Position numbers and translations under genes: made by a program. A DNA stretch of 64,000 bases from Euprymna scolopes (lineage: Eukaryota): assembly GCA_053919585.1 (NCBI GenBank), contig CM132795.1. The stretch is one strand, 5' to 3'. This document shows, piece after piece, positions 2,981 through 23,067 of this stretch. The notes under the pieces are model-generated. The model ran no database searches. It saw only the letters and a program-made list of their open reading frames with translations, and was not told the DNA's origin. How positions within the stretch are numbered: the first letter of the stretch is position 1; each line of letters begins with the position of its first letter.

Positions 2981-3581
2981 CCAAGTATTTGTGTGTGTGT
3001 AAGTGAATAAATGTGAAATTTCTTTTTATTATTGTATCAAAATAGGTTACCGTTGTTTAAATCAATGATAAATTGGAATACTGTATATATGGTAGACATA
3101 AAAAAAAAACCAAACACCACTATCTGTATGCTTCATTTGCATAAGAAATTTTTAAATATTTTATAATAAATGTTTGGGGTTATTAATTTCTAATTTTATT
3201 GCCTTTTCTATCTTTTTTCATCTCTCTATATATCTATCCATCTATCTACTGTTATATAAAAGGAATTTTGTGTGTATGTGTTCCTTCTCTATGAATTCCT
3301 AAATAGCTCAGCCAATTTTTATGAAATTTCACATAAATGTACTTCATGTGCCACCTTCTCAGACTTACATATAACAGAAATCTCATTCCATCAGAGATTT
3401 GTAGTCATGAAAAACACAAAACAGAACAATGTCAAAGAAAAAGAAAATAAAAAAACTTTAAATATCCTTACTTGAAAAAGGTTTCTTTGAAAACCGAAAA
3501 TTGTAATTAAATAAACAATGTTTATTTAATTTTTAAAAAAAAATGCATTTGTTCAGCTTCATTAACGCTTTCATATATAAA

Positions 3582-3649
<68 letters not shown>

Positions 3650-4534
3650 AGGAGCCCGACCTGATGATAATACACACACGTGTATATCCAACACATTTTG
3701 TTTTTTGCTTTTTTTTGTTTAAGGGAGGTGATGTTTGATCAACACTGCTGAGGAGCCATGATTTATTATACTGTTTTGTTTTAAATTCCTGAAACACTGT
3801 TTCATGGTAAACAACTAATGATCCCTGAAAATTAAGACACTTGAATTTGAGAAAGCAAGTTAATTCAGCAATTGGAGGAGATTAAATAGCTTACTAACAA
3901 AATAATTTTCCAACAAAGGACTGAAAAAAATCTTTTTTTTTCATGATTTTCAATGTTAAAAACTTCCAAAACTGTGTGTAAGAAGAGGTGTGTGTAAATG
4001 TTTATATGTACAGAATTCACTTTTAAACTAAGTAACTGATCATAATGAATTTTGAAACAGGTGCTAGACATAAATGTCTCAATGTGGGCTATATTTAGCT
4101 TAGTTTAATGCAAAAGCCATAACGACAAGCTGGAAGATTTTCATAAAAATGGCAGACATTTACAAAATTTAAACAATATGCATTAGTCATCCCCAAATTT
4201 CAGTTTTTTTATAAAATTTGCAAAAACAGCTTTTTTAGAAGTCATAAACTCCAATTTGAAAAATAAAATATTTCAGATTTACATTGAATTTGAAGTAATT
4301 AAACACTAGTTAAGCAAGAATGCTTAAATTTCAATTTCTTCTCAAGACCCCTTAAGCTTTAGCTTCAAATTTGTGATATTTTCTTGGATCAAAATCATGT
4401 AACAGATTTTGATTCTAGATTTTCACAGAAATAAATTGTATGTTTACTTAAGAAACCATCCAATAAAATTTAGTAACTCTGCTCTTTCAAATAAAATTTT
4501 TTTTTTTTAAATCAACACCACACTACAATGCAAC

Positions 4535-4880: not shown

Positions 4881-4917
4881 AAATCTGGTTTCATACATAG
4901 GTATTGTTATGTGTAAA

Positions 4918-5030
4918 TATGGCTTAATCACATTGACACACCGGTTCTCATAGGATCACTGAAGTTAAGCAACACTGAGCCTGGTCAGTACCAGATGGGT
5001 AACCAATTTAGGAATTCCAGGTGCTGTATG
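4918..5030 (+). mobile_element. 5S rRNA-derived SINE (SINE3) head or 5S pseudogene
   Basis: ggcttaatcacattgacacaccggttctcataggatcactgaagttaagcaacactgagcctggtcagtaccagatgggtaacc...ggaattccaggtgctgta aligns end to end with 5S rRNA (A-box aagttaagc, C-box gatggg.gacc). Confidence 0.8.
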
Positions 5031-5601
5031 TAGGAGGACATCTCTTTGCAAGAGTTGTGAAAACCTAACATTGTTATCTTCCCCGACAGGGATATGCATG
5101 CGACTTGTAAATTTTATACTACAATGGAACTTCCTCTTTTGGAGGAAGCTGGTTAAACCTTCAAAGGATTAGTTCTATTTCCATTTTCATTGTTATGTCA
5201 GTTTGCCACAGGCTGCAAATATTTTACTCTGACAAAATTATGTGTGAATTGAGAAAATTATTAGGTGAAAATAAGAACTTGAGAGATGCATGTATATTGA
5301 AGACTTGTTGAAAAAACCAGAGGATGTTTTGTGATTCAAACGTACAATTTTATGTAGGACAAACACAATCAGTTGAAAATGCTCAGTTTTTTTTTGTAAA
5401 AGTTTCGCATTCAATTATTTTGCTTTATAAAAAGATACATTTGGAAATTTAAGATGAATTTGAAAGCATTTTTAGTAGCACCGGATATGAACAGTTAGTG
5501 TAAATCTATGTATGAAAATAAAATACACAATATATCATAAAATGAAATGCTATGGTAACAAGATGTATGAAAAGGTCAATTTAATTTGTTTTGCATTTCG
5601 T

Positions 5602-5664
<63 letters not shown>

Positions 5665-5787
5665 GAAGTAAAAATTAAGTTTATAAGCCAAAAGCTTCTG
5701 TAAACTTAAAGCGAATATTTATATTTATAAAGTAATCCCAACCAAATAAAAAACTCAATACACCCAAGATAGGAAATAGCGCTTGTC

Positions 5788-5973
5788 ATAGAACACAATT
5801 TAAGATTGTAAATTATACTTTACATGAATTTATTGTTTGACAAGATACTCAAATAAGAAATATAAAAAATTTCCTTAATCCGGGGAGTTTCAAAGAAATT
5901 TTAATATTTCTTATTTGAGTATCCTGTAGAACAATAAATTCATATAAAGTATAATTTACACTCTAAAATTGTG

Positions 5974-5979
<6 letters not shown>
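5788..5979. repeat. Imperfect ~85-bp inverted repeat between (TA)n tracts, Penelope-like end remnant
   Basis: atagaacacaattt... pairs with ...aaattgtgttctat. The loop cttaatccggggagtttcaaagaaat matches the hammerhead-bearing segment at 26776-26800. Confidence 0.7.
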
Positions 5980-6022
<43 letters not shown>

Positions 6023-6157
6023 ACTTAATTAACATAAAAATATATTTATAACTTACATCGCTCGGCTTGAATATTGAGTACGGTTAAAGTAAATATTGAA
6101 AATTGATACATAAAATATATCTCTTTATAATATTTTGTGCAGATACATTGAATACTA

Positions 6158-10782: not shown

Positions 10783-11072
10783 AGCTTCCTTCAGTCTTGA
10801 CAGATTATATATACCCATTGTAAGGGTGTTTGCACATGAAAGTTTTGTGGCAAGAGTTGCGCAATCTCCAACCACACCTCTCCTGGATCGGCATTGTTAA
10901 ATACCAATGGCAAGTGGAGATTCAAGACAACTGGAAATAATGTCGAGATAAGCAGAGAGAACATACAGCGCCTAGAATTCTCAAATGGTCACCCATCTGG
11001 TACTAGCTAGGCTCAACGTTGTTTAACTTTGGTGATTTGATGAGAACCAGTTTGTCAATGTGATTATGCCAC
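10783..11072 (-). mobile_element. 5S rRNA-derived SINE (SINE3) with head and body
   Basis: Reverse complement of 10960-11072 is 5S-like. The ~180-bp body is shared with 41348-41634. Flanked by microsatellites. Confidence 0.8.
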
Positions 11073-11074
11073 AC

Positions 11075-11137
<63 letters not shown>

Positions 11138-14299: not shown

Positions 14300-14820
14300 T
14301 TTTCCATCCAAACAAGGTATATTGCCACTTTGAATATAAGAGGCTACTATTTGAGCTCATGTCTCACAGGGAATCGTGGAAAGTTGGGTAGTGAGTTGAT
14401 TGTTCACATTACATTTAAACTTCTACATGTTAGTACAGTCAGGGAAGCAAGAAACATGGATAGAAGTGTAAAGTTTAGCAGTTTGAGGGAAAAATCATTA
14501 GAGCAAAAGGCTTCCTGACATCTAGGGATCTCAACAGTGAAGGCGTGGGATTTTGCTTGTTGGGTTGAGAGTATTTATGTTGAGGAAACAAGTGCTATGA
14601 GTTTCTTGGAGTATATTCCATTAAAGGGTTTGTAAAATAGTCGTAGAGGGGTAAGATTGAGATGATGGAACAGAGGTTGGAGCTTGATGAAAATAGTACG
14701 AGATCTATTACTGTTCAGATTTGGGGGGGGGGCATGTCTCAGAGTGAGAGACTAGTGGTAGATGCGCCAGCTCAGATGTGGCAACAATACTTCATACATG
14801 GGCGAATGGTTGCTTTATAT
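14300..14820 (-). mobile_element. CR1-like LINE 3' fragment
   Basis: The minus strand reads YKATIRPCMKYCCHI*AG, followed by the family 3' tail also seen at 18245-18580. Confidence 0.75.
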
Positions 14821-15373
14821 AACTATTTTTTGATTATTTAATATCGAAGCACAATTGATTTATTTTAAACAAGTAGTTCAACAACAGCTGCTATTTCATC
14901 CATAGCTGGATAGAGATATTGTATGAATTCATACCTTTCCTAACAGTAAAAATCTGTAAATGATAGCAATAAGTCTAATTGGATTTGATTACAGCAAAGC
15001 GGATTCCTTAATCCATAAAAGTATTCATAAGAATATTATGAATTATTGCTCTAGACAAGGCATGAAGCCACTTGATCTAAGGAGCTAAAAAAAATAGTGC
15101 TTCAAGGTTAAAAACTTGCCAACCATAAGTGCTAGAGGACCTAGAAAATGGTAATTCTTCCATCTTTGTCAGAAACATCACTCGTGGAATACGAGGAGTA
15201 AAGGACAAAATAAGGAAAACAAATTATTTAATTAATAATTTATTACACGCCTTCAATATCTGATGAGGATTCTTGCTAATAAACTTTTTTGTTTTTAATA
15301 TGAAGAGTTCAGCAGCGACTCTTCCTTACTGTGGTTGGGGTGAGGGTAACATAATCATGTCAGAACTATTTAA

Positions 15374-15414
15374 TACTTGACCTTTTGGTCAAGATCAAAG
15401 TGTAGCATCTGTTC
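15374..15414 (+). ncRNA. U2 snRNA 5' fragment (stem I and branch-point recognition region) forming the head of the array
   Basis: tacttgaccttttggtcaagatcaaagtgtagcatctgttc versus invertebrate U2 TTCTCGGCCTT(T/A)TGGCTAAGATCAAAGTGTAGTATCTGTTC. Similarity stops exactly before U2 stem IIa. Confidence 0.85.
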
Positions 15415-17463
15415 CGGCAGATGCTGCACTTAGGATAGTTTGTGCCAGTCAATGGAGGGGAAGCCCTCTATACTGGGACAATTATTATTTTTGGTAACCA
15501 GAGTGCCCCCTTTTTGCCTACTTTTAGGGGAGCTGGTTTTTACCTCACATTAAAAACGGCCTTGTGCCTAATTTGCTCAGTGGGGGAGCAAATAAATACC
15601 ATCTGTTCCGGCAGATACTGCACTTAAGATAATTTGTACCAGTCAATGGAGGGGAAACCCTCTATACTGGGACAATTATTATTTTTTGGTAACCAGAGTG
15701 ACCCCTTTTAGGGGAGCTGGTTTTTACCTCACATTAAAAACGGCCTTGTGCCTAATTTGCTCAGTGGGGGAGCAAATAAATACCATCTGTTCCGGCAGAT
15801 GCTGCAAGCTATGATTAGCTATGACTAGCAAAGACCAGATGTGGGGGCAACCCCACATGCCTGACCTTTAACCAGCTCCCATTTCCCACCTCTCGGGAGC
15901 TGGTCCCCTTTTTCCCTTCCCCCTCCCTTCACTCCTCACATTAAAAATGGCCTTGTGCCTAATTTGCTCGGTGGGGGAGCAAATAAATACCATCTGTTCC
16001 GACAGATACTGCAAGCAAAGACCATATGTGGGGGCAACTCCACATATAAGACCTTGGTCAATGTAGGGGCAACCCTTCATACCAATTATCACTATCCAGC
16101 TTCCCTACTCCCCGGGGAGTTGGTCCCCATTTCCCCTTCACTCCTCACTTTAAAAATCGGCCTTGTGCCTAATTTGCTCGGTGGGGGAGCAAATAAATAC
16201 CATCTGTTCCGACAGATACTGCAAGCTATGACTAGCTATGACTAGCAAAGACCAGATGTGGGGGCAACCCCACATGCCTGACCTTTAACCAGCTCCCATT
16301 TCCCACCTCTCGGGAGCTGGTCCCCTTTTCCCTTCCCCCTCCCTTCACTCCTCACATTAAAAATCGGCCTTGTGCCTAATTTGCTCGGTGGGGGAGCAAA
16401 TAAATACCATCTGTTCCGACAGATGCTGCACTTAAGATAATTTGTACCAGTCAATGGAGGGGAAACCCTCTATACTGGGACAATTATTATTTTTGGTAAC
16501 CAGAGTGCACCCTTTTTGCCTACTTTTAGGGGAGCTGGTTTTTACCTCACATTAAAAATGGCCTTGTGCCTAATTTGCTCAGTGGGGGAGCAAATAAATA
16601 CCATCTGTTCCGACAGATACTGCAAGCAAAGACCATATGTGGGGGCAACCCCACATATAAGACCTTGGTCAATGTAGGGGCAACCCTTCATACCAATTGT
16701 CACTATCCAGCTCCCCTACTCCCCGGGGAGTTGGTCCCCATTTCCCCTTCACTCCTCACATTAAAAATTGGCCTTGTGCCTAATTTGCTCGGTGGGGGAG
16801 CAAATAAATACTATCTGTTCCGGCAGATGCTGCAAGCTATGACTAGCTATGACTAGCTATGACTAGCAAAGACCAGATGTGGGGGCAACCCCACATGCCT
16901 GACCTTTAACCAGCTCCCATTTCCCACCTCTCGGGAGCTGGTCCCCTTTTTCCCTTCCCCCTCCCTTCACTCCTCACATTAAAAATTGGCCTTGTGCCTA
17001 ATTTGCTCGGTGGGGGAGCAAATAAATACCATCTGTTCCGGCAGATGCTGCAGGCTATGACTAGCTGTGACTAGCAGAGACCAGATGTGGGGGCAACCCC
17101 ACATGCCTGACCATTAACCAGCTCCCATTTCCCACCTCTCGGGAGCTGGTCCCCTTTTCCCCTTCCCCCTCCCTTCACTTCTCACATTAAAAATCGGCCT
17201 TGTGCCTAATTTGCTCGGTGGGGGAGCAAATAAATACCATCTGTTCTTCAGATGCTGCAAGCTATGACTAGCAAAGACCAGCTATGACTAGCAAAGACCA
17301 GATGTGGGGGCAACCCCACATGCCTGCCCTTTAACCAGCTCCCATTTCCCACCTCTCGGGAGCTGGTCCCCTTTTTCCCTTCCCCCTCCCTTCACTCCTC
17401 ACATTAAAAATCGGCCTTGTGCCTAGTTTGCTCGGTGGGGGAGCAAATAAATACCATCTGTTC
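15415..17463 (+). repeat. Aperiodic tandem array of ten 184-218-bp cassettes (types A A' B C B A C B B B') with a shared ~80-bp constant segment
   Basis: Units end at 15608, 15792, 15999, 16209, 16416, 16610, 16820, 17038, 17246 and 17463. Constant part: ctcacattaaaaa..ggccttgtgcctaatttgctc(a/g)gtgggggagcaaataaatac-catctgttc-c(g/a)..cagat(g/a)ctgca. Confidence 0.95.
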
Positions 17464-17612
17464 TTCAGATGCTGCACTTCCATTTCTTGTTCTCTTTCGG
17501 TGAAGGAGCAGTCCTTTACGACTGAGACAATTTTTTATTTTTGTACCTTTTCTCCACAATAAAAAACGACCCTGGTGTCTAACTATGTCCCGTGGGGGGC
17601 ATTGTAAATAGA
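17464..17612 (+). mobile_element. Terminal cassette D, the body of the U2-headed host element
   Basis: Colinear with 49402-49545, which follows a U2 head directly with no array. Confidence 0.8.
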
Positions 17613-18124
17613 TATAATAACAAAACTCTGGTAAAAAGATGTCAACATAAGGATCTGTTGCCTCTTGCTTCTCTTTATCCATTTCTTTATTACATGAGAT
17701 TGGGTCATAAACTGGATAACTACCCATTTTCAATTTCATATTTGTTAAATACAAAGGCAGATTATGGCTTTGGTGTGTTGGTTTGAGTTATGTCAAGGTT
17801 ACTCTATCATGTTCACCAATATATTTAGAAAAAGTATTAATCCATATATCCTCTCTGTAACCGTAAATTAAATAGTAGGGTAAACTAAACTCTCAAGCCT
17901 TGGTTGTGCAACTTGTCGAGGAATAGGAAAACTTTGAAATAACATTAGTCTTTCTTTGCTTATTCTAGGATTGTTTCCAGTCATTCTGAACTTCTGGCAC
18001 TGAATTGAAGCATTGGCAGTCGTGGAAAGATACAAGTGCAGATTGTAGAATCCTTGTTTTAATAGATTCTCTGCATGGAAGGAGTATCCATTATTTTCAG
18101 GGATAAAAAATAGGCCTATAAATA

Positions 18125-18945
18125 GTAATACAGATGTTTTTTTTTTATTTTGCAACCTTAAGTATTGACTTAATTGTTTCGACGGACAGAAAATTTGTCT
18201 GCTTCACCAGACAGCAAAAGTCAAAATGAGAAGGGGAAGAAAAAATGGTGAATGCTCTGACGAACTGCAGACACTTATGCCCCCACGACGCATGCATCCT
18301 CGACAAACCCGACAGGCAGCTAAATCCCACCCCCACATAGTAGAGATCCCTAGATGTAAAAGATCTTTCTACTTCAGTAGTTTCTTCCCCAGAACCGCTA
18401 GACTCTGGAATTCCATTCCAGGTCCCTGTTTCCCTAACTGTACTGACATGCAAAAGTTCAAGTGTAATGTGAACCGACATCTTGCTGCCCAAATCCCAAC
18501 ATAGTGCCCCAGTAGTTGCTGCCCCTGATAGTAGCCCCCTAAACCAAAGTGGCAATGTGCATTGTTTGGGGTGAAAATTTAATTAAAAAAAAATATATAT
18601 ATATTATTTGTAAGGTTACAAGTGGATAATAACAAAATAAGAGAAATATAGAGAAAGAAAAAAAAGAAAAAAAGGGGAGATAGAGAGAAAGAAAGAAGCA
18701 TACATTTGCATTATTTTTAGTTAATTTTAACAATGCATTTTTTTCTTTTTCTCTTTTTTTCTCTCTATATTTCTCTTATTTTGTTAATATCCACTCTTAG
18801 CCCTAAAAATCTTATTTTCTTCCGTTTCTCGTTTTGACTTTTGCCGTCTGACGAAGCAGACAGTAAATTTTCTGTCTGTGGAAACAATTGTAATCGATTA
18901 AGTCAATACTTGGTTGTAAAATAAAGAACATATTTAGCTCTACTA
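18125..18945. mobile_element. Penelope-like inverted-end remnant with hammerhead-like cores and a nested LINE fragment
   Basis: 18125-18241 is the inverted copy of 18815-18945. An inner inverted pair lies at 18620-18670 / 18740-18795. CTGACGA-A-stem-GAAAC-AATT-GTA at 18848-18892. Confidence 0.6.
18245..18580 (+). mobile_element. CR1-like LINE 3' end (best-preserved copy of the family)
   Basis: GECSDELQTLMPP...TRQAAKSHPHIVEIPRCKRSFYFSSFFPRTARLWNSIPGPCFP...MQKFKCNVNRHL stop, then 3' UTR ending gggtgaaaa. Confidence 0.85.
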
Positions 18946-22932: not shown

Positions 22933-23067
22933 NNNNNNNNNNNNNNNNNNNNNNNNNNNNNNNNNNNNNNNNNNNNNNNNNNNNNNNNNNNNNNNNNNNN
23001 NNNNNNNNNNNNNNNNNNNNNNNNNNNNNNNNNNNNNNNNNNNNNNNNNNNNNNNNNNNNNNNNNNN
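22933..23067. other. Assembly gap (135 N)
   Basis: N run; aaggtcaaaaacta occurs on both sides. Confidence 0.99.

What the first reader, a model, noticed from the sequence alone, without database searches (positions are those of the whole stretch)
15374..17612. U2 snRNA-headed, CRISPR-like stack of site-specifically inserted short cassettes
Seen: a 41-nt U2 snRNA 5' segment, then ten cassettes of three clearly different types in non-periodic order (A A' B C B A C B B B'), then a fourth type D. Every cassette ends ...AAATAAATAC and is immediately followed by (C/T)ATCTGTTC, the U2 sequence starting at about nt 37-38; the 16811 junction even has the canonical U2 T. Known: the non-LTR retrotransposons Keno (Tx1 clade) and Utopia (NeSL-related) target U2 genes, Keno at about this position, and snRNA-headed SINEs (SINEU) are described mainly from crocodilians. 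Inference: simple tandem duplication explains the shuffled order poorly. It fits repeated target-primed insertion, or template jumping, of several non-coding ~200-nt passenger RNAs at one U2-derived site that is regenerated each time. The result is an ordered record of mobilised RNAs. I do not recognise this family.
Basis: partly seen in the sequence, partly recalled or inferred. Interest (0 to 1): 0.9.

Follow-up and report, generated by a model that had tools for sequence, protein, structure and literature searches.

The report
Stacked U2-headed SINE array
This stretch is one copy of a very abundant, young family of short non-coding retroposons in a mollusc genome: the family starts with a piece of U2 spliceosomal RNA, and extra "headless" units pile up head-to-tail just behind that piece, which matters as an undescribed invertebrate relative of the snRNA-headed SINEs rather than as a CRISPR-like recorder.

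Summary
A U2-like head (15374-15405) is followed by ten ~200-nt units (A A' B C B A C B B B') and a terminal D body. Every unit ends AAATAAATAC and abuts (C/T)ATCTGTTC.

It is not a local oddity. Head+D alone is an ordinary dispersed SINE flanked by target-site duplications (TSDs), with over 10,000 copies. About 10,000 cassette-bearing places exist on all chromosomes. In each of 20 other loci fetched, the cassettes again stand in arrays. Most arrays begin with a head; at six, perfect TSDs bracket the whole array.

The junction lies in the same register as the Keno/Utopia landing site in U2 (nt 38/39).

My best reading (about 0.45) is target-primed insertion of cassette RNA at the U2-like junction segment of resident copies, resolved by homology. 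Heavy later reshuffling by unequal crossing-over is shown. Template-switch concatemers made in a single retroposition are a strong rival.

The "ordered record" idea is not supported: blocks are duplicated in place, multi-unit blocks recur between loci, and there is no clear age gradient.

About 1,200 real U2 genes carry the same 22-nt core. At most one junction of a cassette-type tail with real-U2 sequence exists, and it lies outside the main U2 array.

I could not find the partner LINE.

The scan has already flagged this family in at least eight other windows of this genome.

The parts
15368..15375 (+). possible degenerate target-site duplication, left copy (ATTTAATA; right copy ATATAATA at 17612-17619, 7 of 8 match)
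   Evidence: Read by eye. Automated searches found no exact TSD of 8 bp or more at this locus. Weak.
15374..15405 (+). U2-derived head: stem-loop I (CTTGACC/GGTCAAG, a compensated variant) plus GATCAAAGTGTAG (branch-point box); corresponds roughly to U2 nt 5-36
   Evidence: Rfam U2 hit 15369-15526, 29.4 bits, E 0.0028. The 22-nt core of the SINE heads equals that of the genome's real U2 genes; here it differs at U2 position 37 (C for T). With the junction segment it folds into a 15-bp hairpin, -34.3 kcal/mol, z -8.7.
15406..15599 (+). unit 1, type A1 (194 nt): junction segment CATCTGTTCCGGCAGATGCTGCA, body with GNRA-capped hairpin and Sm-like AATTATTATTTTTGG, tail ..GCAAATAAATAC. The head-side junction has C, not the usual T.
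15600..15783 (+). unit 2, type A' (184 nt, deletion variant of A)
15784..15990 (+). unit 3, type B (207 nt)
15991..16200 (+). unit 4, type C (210 nt), junction loop variant CGA
16201..16407 (+). unit 5, type B (207 nt), loop CGA
16408..16601 (+). unit 6, type A2 (194 nt), loop CGA
16602..16811 (+). unit 7, type C (210 nt), loop CGA
16812..17029 (+). unit 8, type B (218 nt, three AGCTATGACT repeats); begins with T instead of C
17030..17237 (+). unit 9, type B (208 nt)
17238..17454 (+). unit 10, type B' (217 nt): B body with D-type junction loop (TTCTTCAG) and a 20-nt internal duplication at 17260-17301
17455..17613 (+). terminal D body: the 3' part of the ordinary monomeric SINE (head+D). 10 differences from the D consensus, 4 of them private.
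49364..49545 (+). old, diverged 'empty' monomer of the same family (head joined directly to D body, site mutated to GTAGTACCTG)
48786..48935 (+). further partial, diverged family member
   Evidence: nhmmer with family alignment A1, E 2.6e-10

Best explanation
WHAT IT IS (shown). This is one copy of a young, very abundant SINE-like retroposon family of a mollusc, probably a decapodiform cephalopod (an inference from run labels, genome size and chromosome number).

A full monomer of about 190 nt has these parts:
- a U2 snRNA-derived head (stem-loop I plus GUAGUA box, about 37 nt);
- a junction segment J (AUCUGUUC-loop-CAGAUGCUGCA) that continues the U2 similarity and pairs back on the head;
- a structured body;
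- a shared 3' tail without poly(A).

Body types A, B, C and D are homologous variants.

In thousands of copies, extra headless units (J+body+tail) are stacked between the head and the last body. The tail of each unit (..AAAUACC) is joined to A38 of the next J.

HOW THE STACK FORMS (inferred, about 0.45).
1. Cassette RNAs are reverse-transcribed by a LINE machinery directly at the J site of resident copies. The 3' step is target-primed at T37^A38.
2. This is favoured because RNAs with the A/B/C tail integrate next to ATCT(G)-like sequence.
3. The 5' end is resolved by homology within J. The head is therefore not copied in, the first ~12 nt of the target's J are duplicated, and an intact head|J site is regenerated for the next round.

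SHOWN: arrays are afterwards reshaped by unequal crossing-over and block duplication. Template jumps and multi-unit templates also occur.

The array is therefore not a clean chronological record.
For: Family and dispersal:
- Unit A has at least 1,370 candidate sites at 97-100% identity.
- The empty head+D monomer has at least 2,238 candidates, the best 40 full length at 97-100%.
- Whole-genome pattern counts give 10,236 TGGYCAAG-head + D-type J sites and 5,206 GGGACAAG-head + cassette-type J sites.
- Monomer TSDs are 7-15 bp.
- Perfect TSDs of 10-18 bp bracket whole arrays at L006, L013, L014, L016a, L016b and L018.

For in-place insertion at J:
1. The junction register equals the Keno/Utopia site, where the downstream U2 flank starts at nt 39 (PMC4640811).
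2. The three arrays that end in an A/B/C tail at unique DNA have TSDs beginning ATCTG, ATCTC and CTCTC. That is J-like, as described for weakly specific Utopia. D-tailed copies land at (T)ACA in nearly all of about 30 monomer flanks read.
3. There is a linkage break inside J. The loop variant (CGG/CGA/TT) runs in blocks across different body types (55 of 77 against 46.5 +/- 3.1, P 0.004). The D-type loop sits on B units next to the terminal D in 4 of 5 cases. The R of CAGAT[R] instead follows its own body (C units 14 of 14 A). A ~12-nt target duplication with homology-resolved 5' joining predicts exactly this.
4. Cassettes are uniformly young (1-2.5% from consensus), while the flanking D varies from 0 to 11.6%. 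In L003 the D has 9 private changes in 155 nt against about 3 in 1,164 nt of cassettes; in the window the figures are 4 in 157 against about 9 in 1,834.
5. One junction exists where a cassette-type tail is joined to real-U2 downstream sequence (C1:71378046).

In-place reshuffling.
Against: - 1,201 real U2 sites share the 22-nt core, mostly in a 764-bp tandem array on C9. Genome-wide only one junction joins a cassette-type tail to real-U2 downstream sequence, and it lies on C1. A nuclease specific for the U2 core would predict dozens or more, so targeting would have to depend on the SINE-specific part of J.
- I found no partner LINE. None turned up in 340 kb scanned with a tail profile.
- Joints of a precise tail to the very 5' end of a full head or leader (L008 twice, L009, L002, L020) show that end-to-end template jumps occur. 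So does L018, a TSD-flanked composite that begins with a 62-nt 3' fragment of a unit.
- A B-B-C block with the rare CGA loop recurs in L008 and L017, and partly in L012. The odd 'C unit + partial head + D' joint recurs in L012 and L017. Multi-unit pieces therefore move together.
- There is no significant age gradient along arrays (rho 0.15, P 0.06; a weak, confounded trend).
- The 'older D' measure may be inflated by poor sampling of old D subfamilies.
Confidence: 0.45

Rival explanations
1. Single-event concatemers. During one target-primed retroposition the LINE reverse transcriptase starts on a D (or A/B/C) RNA. It then switches templates repeatedly, either end-to-end onto the ..ACC 3' end of another SINE RNA or by copy choice within the homologous J and tail segments of multi-unit array RNAs. 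It finishes on a headed RNA. Arrays would thus be born complete, then modified by unequal crossing-over.
For: - Whole arrays of up to 17 units are bracketed by one perfect TSD, with the head at or near the TSD (L006, L013, L014, L016, L018).
- L018 starts with a 5'-truncated unit fragment followed by a headed unit with a foreign 50-nt leader.
- Joints run from a precise tail to the 5' end of full heads or leaders.
- Multi-unit blocks and rare joints are shared between unlinked loci (L008, L012, L017).
- D is never internal. The one apparent case, in L016, is two adjacent arrays.
- Real U2 genes are untouched.
- Heads are far more variable than the adjacent 97-99% identical first unit, as in the recurrent 5' addition of U2 sequence reported for SINEU (PMC4494074).
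Against: - There is no reason why about 95% of switches should leave the donor at exactly A38, the Keno/Utopia site. No ribozyme or other processing signal was found there (Rfam).
- It does not predict loop variants running in blocks across body types with the D-type loop next to D.
- It does not predict young cassettes beside old D bodies.
- No headless RNA was seen, although only poly(A) RNA-seq was available.
Confidence: 0.27
2. DNA-level origin only. One or a few founder head-to-tail dimers arose by chance. All standard junctions descend from them through unequal crossing-over, retroposition of whole array transcripts, and ectopic gene conversion between the more than 20,000 dispersed copies.
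For: - In-place duplication is demonstrated: nearest neighbour in the same array for 24 of 67 A, 36 of 71 B and 4 of 14 C units, against 5.4, 8.2 and 0.9 expected.
- Higher-order periods occur in L001 and L007, a flank+head duplication at a CATCTG microhomology in L007, and a duplicated B+E unit in L008.
- The uniform junction, with C at position 37, is what common descent gives.
- Real U2 genes are not hit.
Against: - Terminal D bodies span the whole diversity of monomer D copies (0 to 18 differences; L006 is identical to the youngest consensus). The cassette-to-D joint must therefore have formed many times independently at the same nucleotide.
- Gene conversion inserting kilobases with only about 45 bp of left homology at thousands of loci is implausible (general knowledge of recombination).
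- A/B/C-tailed arrays land at ATCT-type targets with fresh TSDs, which is retroposition.
Confidence: 0.15
3. Assembly artefact: the shuffled order at this locus is a mis-join of reads from different copies.
For: The unit order here was not verified by long reads. Short-read contigs cannot span it.
Against: The same architecture, with unique flanks and TSDs, is seen at 20 other loci on 17 different chromosome-scale contigs. All unit types are present at high depth in two independent DNA runs, one from a related species.
Confidence: 0.03

Closest known systems
SINEU (snRNA-headed SINEs of crocodilians; Kojima 2015, PMC4494074)
   Same: - Short non-coding retroposons whose 5' head is copied from U2 (or U1) snRNA.
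- SINEU-3 looks like an internally deleted U2.
- Copies are often found in tandem.
- There is recurrent remodelling of the 5' U2 part, attributed to template switching.
- A Tx1-type (Keno-related) LINE is the suspected driver.
   Different: - SINEU was reported only from crocodilians, has poly(A) tails, and its tandem copies sandwich a TSD.
- Here the host is a mollusc and the tail is a structured ..GCAAATAAATACC / ..GTAAATAGGT end without poly(A).
- Extra units are headless, abut seamlessly at U2 nt 37/38, and reach 20 or more units.
Keno (Tx1 clade) and Utopia (NeSL-related) U2-targeting LINEs, and Ciona YURE inserting into the U2-derived satellite U2_sat (Kojima & Jurka 2015, PMC4640811)
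   Same: - The 3' junction is in the same register (downstream U2 flank from nt 39).
- Tandem insertions in U2 genes occur occasionally.
- Weakly specific families land at U2-site-like sequences such as TGTAGTATCTG, as the A/B/C-tailed arrays here do (ATCTG, ATCTC, CTCTC).
- In Ciona the target can be a U2-derived repeat rather than the gene.
   Different: - The units here are non-coding ~200-nt elements.
- I found no ORF-bearing relative.
- Real U2 genes are essentially not occupied (at most 1 junction against 1,201 intact sites).
- The landing site is carried by the element family itself.
Non-autonomous derivatives of site-specific LINEs (R2 'SIDE' elements) and head-to-tail arrays built by repeated end-targeted retroposition (Drosophila HeT-A/TART) - from my own knowledge, not checked in a paper here
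   Same: Short internally deleted or non-coding passengers use a site-specific LINE machinery. Serial target-primed additions give head-to-tail arrays.
   Different: Those targets are rRNA genes or chromosome ends. Here the target is a sequence inside the passenger itself, at more than 10,000 dispersed loci.
Chimeric retrocopies made by reverse-transcriptase template switching (U6-L1 and snRNA-Alu chimeras, as cited in PMC4494074) and composite SINEs with an internal VNTR (SVA; my own knowledge)
   Same: An snRNA sequence lies at the 5' end of a retrocopy. Multi-part elements have a variable number of internal repeats. One TSD surrounds the composite.
   Different: Switches there are sporadic and at variable positions. 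Here one nucleotide position is used about 95% of the time and units are complete 3' parts of sister elements.
CRISPR arrays
   Same: A leader-like head is followed by repeated junction segments separating variable inserts.
   Different: There is no repeat/spacer logic. Only three or four insert types recur, blocks are duplicated in place, no significant polarity was measured, and this is a eukaryotic retroposon with TSDs.

Membership tests
SINE (LINE-mobilised short retroposon) | short, non-coding, dispersed in high copy number | tested here: met
   Monomer about 190 nt. Pattern counts of 10,236 and 5,206 head-junction sites on all chromosomes. Best copies 97-100% identical.
SINE (LINE-mobilised short retroposon) | flanked by target-site duplications of variable sequence | tested here: met
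   Monomers: 7-15 bp TSDs in 11 of 22 distinct loci, with occasional extra 5' nucleotides. Arrays: 10-18 bp perfect TSDs at six loci. At this window's locus only a doubtful 7 of 8 match.
SINE (LINE-mobilised short retroposon) | 3' tail shared with a partner LINE | not tested
   No LINE with this tail was found in the window plus 50 loci. Other agents' notes claim such a LINE; I did not verify this.
SINEU-type (snRNA-headed) SINE | 5' head derived from U1/U2 snRNA | tested here: met
   Rfam U2 at 28-30 bits, E 0.003-0.05, below the gathering score of 46, for several members. The SINE heads share a 22-nt identity with the genome's 1,201 real U2 sites.
SINEU-type (snRNA-headed) SINE | poly(A) tail, crocodilian host (as described in PMC4494074) | tested here: not met
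   Tails end ..AAATAAATACC or ..GTAAATAGGT and directly abut the TSD. The host is a mollusc by run labels.
Keno/Utopia-dependent U2-site-specific element | 3' end abuts U2 sequence starting at nt 39 | tested here: met
   ..AAATACC|ATCTGTTC (equally readable as ..ACCA|TCTGTTC) at 10 of 10 junctions here and about 95% of some 190 junctions elsewhere. Site taken from PMC4640811.
Keno/Utopia-dependent U2-site-specific element | copies occupy genuine U2 snRNA genes | tested here: not met
   1,201 intact real-U2 sites. Only 3 genome-wide matches to [not T]ATCTGTTCTTATCAG, equal to the reversed-pattern control, and only one of them has the cassette tail.
Keno/Utopia-dependent U2-site-specific element | autonomous LINE (APE or RLE endonuclease plus RT) with the same 3' end | not tested
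   Could not be searched. The interruptions of about 7.9 kb in the 764-bp U2 array were not read.
CRISPR-like chronological array | polarised addition at the leader end (age gradient) | tested here: inconclusive
   Spearman rho 0.15, P 0.06. A twofold trend in locus-private changes is confounded by array size. D-type loops lie near the D end.
CRISPR-like chronological array | order reflects acquisitions only (no internal duplication) | tested here: not met
Self-cleaving-ribozyme tandem repeats (retrozyme-like) | hammerhead, HDV-like or other ribozyme in each unit | tested here: not met
   No ribozyme family at E up to 10 in 14800-18200.

The most novel reading that the evidence does not exclude
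A 'homing' non-autonomous retroposon that carries its own landing pad. Each inserted RNA would bring a copy of the U2-like junction segment, so the site is regenerated next to the head. Units would then add serially at the head-proximal position, making the least-rearranged arrays partial chronological logs of which SINE RNAs were active in the germ line. Targeting would be specified by RNA-DNA homology, not by the nuclease, which is why real U2 genes are spared.
Probability: 0.2. Interest if true: 0.8.

Novelty: new variant of a known kind. Interest (0 to 1): 0.6.

Why it matters
- snRNA-headed SINEs have so far been described only from crocodilians (PMC4494074). A recent cuttlefish genome paper states that decapodiform genomes contain almost no SINEs (PMC13218726). 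If this genome is decapodiform, tens of thousands of young U2-headed copies, and 5S-headed ones, would revise that picture. It would also show that library-based annotation misses them.
- The family offers a natural system in which a retroposon's own sequence serves, or mimics, the landing site of U2-targeting LINEs. The thousands of independent arrays let one separate target-primed insertion, template switching and unequal crossing-over.
- If the homology-guided reading holds, it would be an example of RNA-specified site choice in eukaryotic retrotransposition.
- Arrays of 2-5 kb of near-identical units at about 10,000 loci are also a practical hazard for assembly and for RNA-seq mapping in this clade.

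Tried and rejected
1. Head type as a discriminator. In my first 21 arrays the heads (GGCCTTTTGGYCAAG) differed from those of 30 empty monomers (GGCCTTCGGGACAAG). I took this as evidence against insertion into resident D copies. Whole-genome counts overturned it: 5,206 GGGACAAG heads are followed by cassette-type J and 10,236 TGGYCAAG heads by D-type J. Both samples were biased.
2. Collinear homology between arrays. Nearest-neighbour synteny gave 6 against 2.7 expected, not significant. The best other loci match the whole array at 92% over about 1.9 kb, but by my estimate that could arise by chance with three unit types and roughly 1,000 arrays.
3. Real-U2-type heads (GCTAAG) in front of cassettes. 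There are 177 dispersed sites. This is ambiguous, because a single C>T change in about 10,000 GCCAAG heads would give similar numbers.
4. Rfam search of the genome for U2 failed twice. A vertebrate-type U2 pattern found nothing because protostome U2 has GATCAAAGTG; the corrected pattern worked.
5. Ribozyme or processing signal at the junction: none in Rfam. An RNA-polymerase-III box-A-like motif in the tail and a TATA-like AAATAAATA are in the wrong place for a start at nt 38 (by eye).
6. RNA evidence. Poly(A) RNA-seq reads cover the family equally on both strands and the unique flanks of this locus have zero depth. There is thus no sign of a dedicated transcript and no information on headless RNAs.
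7. The 315-nt 'E' element as a possible LINE 3' end. Frame 0 is open for only 53 codons from its 5' end and nothing in it looks like reverse transcriptase.
8. TSD quality as a clock. TSDs are too short and variable (5-18 bp) to date insertions.
Full report
OBSERVATION

The head TACTTGACCTTTTGGTCAAGATCAAAGTGTAG (15374-15405) is followed by ten units. Each begins [C/T]ATCTGTTC and ends GCAAATAAATAC. The unit starts are 15406, 15600, 15784, 15991, 16201, 16408, 16602, 16812, 17030 and 17238. A different terminal body D follows (17455 to about 17613).

Typing by alignment gives A A' B C B A C B B B' D. Tandem Repeats Finder sees the array only as an imperfect 207-217-nt repeat.

Rfam aligns 15369-15526 to U2 at 29.4 bits, E 0.0028, below the gathering score. 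The aligned parts are stem-loop I, the GUAGUA box and an Sm-like site.

THE UNITS ARE NOT LOCAL

- The window lies on a chromosome-size contig of a 5.9-Gb genome. Run labels point to a mollusc. Genome size and about 46 large contigs suggest a decapodiform cephalopod; that is my inference.
- Unit A has at least 1,370 candidate sites, and all 40 scored are 97-100% identical on many chromosomes.
- The whole array gives 9,831 candidates.
- In 20 loci fetched around A hits, the units again stand in arrays of 1 to more than 20 units in shuffled A/B/C order. Most arrays begin with a U2-like head. More than half end in a D body.

THE MONOMER

An old copy with head joined directly to D lies in this very window (49364-49545; lead from note s1-288566). 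Such monomers are an ordinary SINE.
- A clean copy, L003:221-409, is flanked by the 15-bp TSD ACAAGAATAGACAAT. It has at least 2,238 candidate relatives, the best 40 full length at 97-100%.
- Whole-genome pattern counts give 10,236 sites with a TGGYCAAG head followed by the D-type junction. They give 5,206 sites with a GGGACAAG head followed by the cassette-type junction.
- Monomer TSDs are 7-15 bp. Nearly all of about 30 monomer flanks read begin (T)ACA. Some copies have extra 5' nucleotides. These are hallmarks of LINE-mediated retroposition.
- Older relatives show that A and D are variants of one U2-like RNA with a conserved fold and some compensatory changes, for example GACC..GTGTC against GGCC..GTGCC.

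ARRAYS SIT INSIDE SINE COPIES, NOT IN U2 GENES

Perfect TSDs bracket whole arrays:
- L006: 14 bp.
- L013: 17 bp, around 17 units.
- L014: 11 bp.
- L016a: 10 bp.
- L016b: 17 bp.
- L018: 18 bp.

The genome's real U2 genes are mostly a 764-bp tandem array on another chromosome, with 1,201 sites matching GATCAAAGTGTAGTATCTGTTCTTATCAG. They share the 22-nt core with the SINE heads. Genome-wide, however, only three places have a non-T base before ATCTGTTCTTATCAG, no more than the reversed-pattern control. Only one of these is a cassette tail (GGGGGAGCAAATAAATACC|ATCTG.., C1:71378046).

THE JUNCTION

- The upstream partner is always the precise tail ..AAATACC.
- The downstream partner starts at A38 of the U2 numbering in about 95% of cases. 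Internal junctions therefore read C-ATCTG and the head junction reads T-ATCTG.
- This is the register in which Keno and Utopia abut U2, with the downstream flank starting at nt 39 (PMC4640811).
- Rare other joints start the downstream unit at nt 27 of the head (L001 and L008 after a diverged unit; L012 and L017 before D). Others start it at the very 5' end of a full head (L008 twice, L009) or of a longer leader (L002, L020).
- The head and J form a 15-bp hairpin that buries the branch-point box (-34.3 kcal/mol, z -8.7; lead from note s1-288675).

EVIDENCE BEARING ON MECHANISM

(a) In-place DNA rearrangement is certain.
- A unit's nearest relative lies in the same array for 24 of 67 A, 36 of 71 B and 4 of 14 C units. 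The expected numbers are 5.4, 8.2 and 0.9.
- L001 and L007 show multi-unit periodicity.
- L008 has the same B unit, with a foreign 315-nt insert, twice.
- L007 duplicates its flank together with the head.

(b) Template jumps and multi-unit templates occur.
- L018 is one TSD-flanked composite. It consists of a 62-nt 3' fragment of a unit, then a headed unit with a foreign 50-nt leader, then a headless unit.
- The rare joint 'C unit + partial head + D' is shared by the unlinked loci L012 and L017.
- A B-B-C block with the rare CGA loop recurs in L008 and L017, and partly in L012.

(c) Several features favour insertion at J in resident copies.
- The three arrays ending in an A/B/C tail at unique DNA have TSDs beginning ATCTG, ATCTC and CTCTC. 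These resemble J and differ from the (T)ACA targets of D-tailed copies.
- The loop of J (CGG/CGA/TT) runs in blocks across different unit types (P 0.004). The D-type loop sits on B units beside the terminal D in 4 of 5 cases, including unit 10 of this window.
- The next polymorphic base, six nucleotides on, follows the unit's own body (lead from note s1-288609). This is what a ~12-nt duplication of the target's J with a homology-resolved 5' junction would leave.
- Cassettes are uniformly 1-2.5% from consensus, while terminal D bodies range from 0 to 11.6%. In L003 and in this window the D has more private changes than the cassettes.

(d) Several features count against a U2-core-specific nuclease.
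- Real U2 genes are spared.
- I could not find the LINE.
- There is no significant age gradient.

WEIGHING

I put the odds as follows:
- In-place, homology-assisted target-primed insertion at J: about 0.45.
- Concatemers made by template switching in one retroposition event: about 0.27.
- A purely DNA-level history: about 0.15.
- Misassembly: about 0.03.
- The remainder is unassigned.

All readings agree that this is a retroposon family and that the present order of units is not a faithful chronological record.

OTHER NOTES OF THIS SCAN

Other notes report the same family in at least eight other windows of this genome. They assert a Keno-like partner LINE sharing tail and site inside the U2 cluster. 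I treated this as a lead only. The one prediction I could test, cassette-type tails abutting real U2 sequence, gave a single hit outside the main U2 array.

LITERATURE

- SINEU were reported only from crocodilians, with poly(A) tails and tandem copies that sandwich a TSD (PMC4494074).
- Utopia and Keno target U2, and Ciona YURE inserts into a U2-derived satellite (PMC4640811).
- A cuttlefish genome paper reports almost no SINEs in decapodiforms (PMC13218726).
- Full-text searches found no description of U2-headed, self-stacking SINEs in molluscs.

I therefore class this as a new variant of a known kind.

RNA AND OTHER SPECIES

Poly(A) RNA-seq reads map to the family on both strands about equally, and the unique flanks of this locus are silent. 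The array here is therefore not detectably expressed. DNA contigs of a related species ('organism B') carry all unit types at high depth, so the family predates that split.

Noticed in passing
window 4915-5032 (+), 10960-11076 (-), 41521-41637 (-): Three 5S rRNA-like sequences (Rfam 46-64 bits) are each followed by a shared non-5S body (..GCTGTATGT + TCTCTGCT..CCAGGAGAGGTG..). They look like 5S-headed SINEs (SINE3-like), not rRNA genes. A similar body lies downstream of the array in L003.
   Followed up: partly
G000:C9:168867294-168968788 (- strand) and beyond: The real U2 snRNA genes form a 764-bp tandem array; 1,201 intact sites were counted genome-wide. The periodicity is interrupted by gaps of 7,875-8,382 bp after 168876462, 168918351, 168928557 and 168946384. 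These could be inserted elements, variant units or assembly gaps. I could not read them.
   Followed up: no
G000:C1:71378046-71378079 (-): This is the only place in the genome where a cassette-type tail (GGGGGAGCAAATAAATACC) abuts real-U2 downstream sequence (ATCTGTTCTTATCAG). It is a candidate cassette or partner-LINE insertion in a U2 copy.
   Followed up: no
L008 (reverse complement) 3417-3731 and 5772-6086; L014 4102-4302: A further ~315-nt GC-rich retroposon ('E', tail ..GGCAGC(T/A)AATAAATATC, related to the family tail) is inserted inside B and A units with TSDs of about 15-18 bp. It shows that the same kind of machinery also lands at non-junction sites.
   Followed up: partly
L002, L019, L020 (arrays with GGCCGGG heads): One subfamily has a ~20-nt 5' leader (TTGCCTTTTTTCTGTTGTT) before the head. 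Its 3' flank (CTAACAGAAAAGAGGG) is roughly the leader's reverse complement. In L002 full units with leader and spacer repeat in tandem. These may be source genes or a terminal-stem variant.
   Followed up: no
window 15007-15220: Just upstream of the array lies another repeat with very high depth in DNA contigs of both species. Its minus strand gives a weak U6atac-like Rfam match (15.8 bits, E 0.84), most likely chance.
   Followed up: no
window 15383 (loose ends in RNA runs X23, X24): About 145 RNA reads per run join TCCCTTGCATTTCCTACCTTTTTGATACAG (a polypyrimidine tract ending CAG, like a 3' splice site) to the head from its loop onward. One family copy elsewhere is therefore part of a well-expressed transcript.
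   Followed up: no
L038, L041-L047, L049; and L028, L032, L033, L048: These groups of monomer copies share identical flanks, on several chromosomes and clustered on C6 and C46. Some SINE-D copies have thus been multiplied as passengers of larger repeats or segmental duplications.
   Followed up: no
window 22933-23067: A run of 135 N (assembly gap or masked stretch).
   Followed up: no
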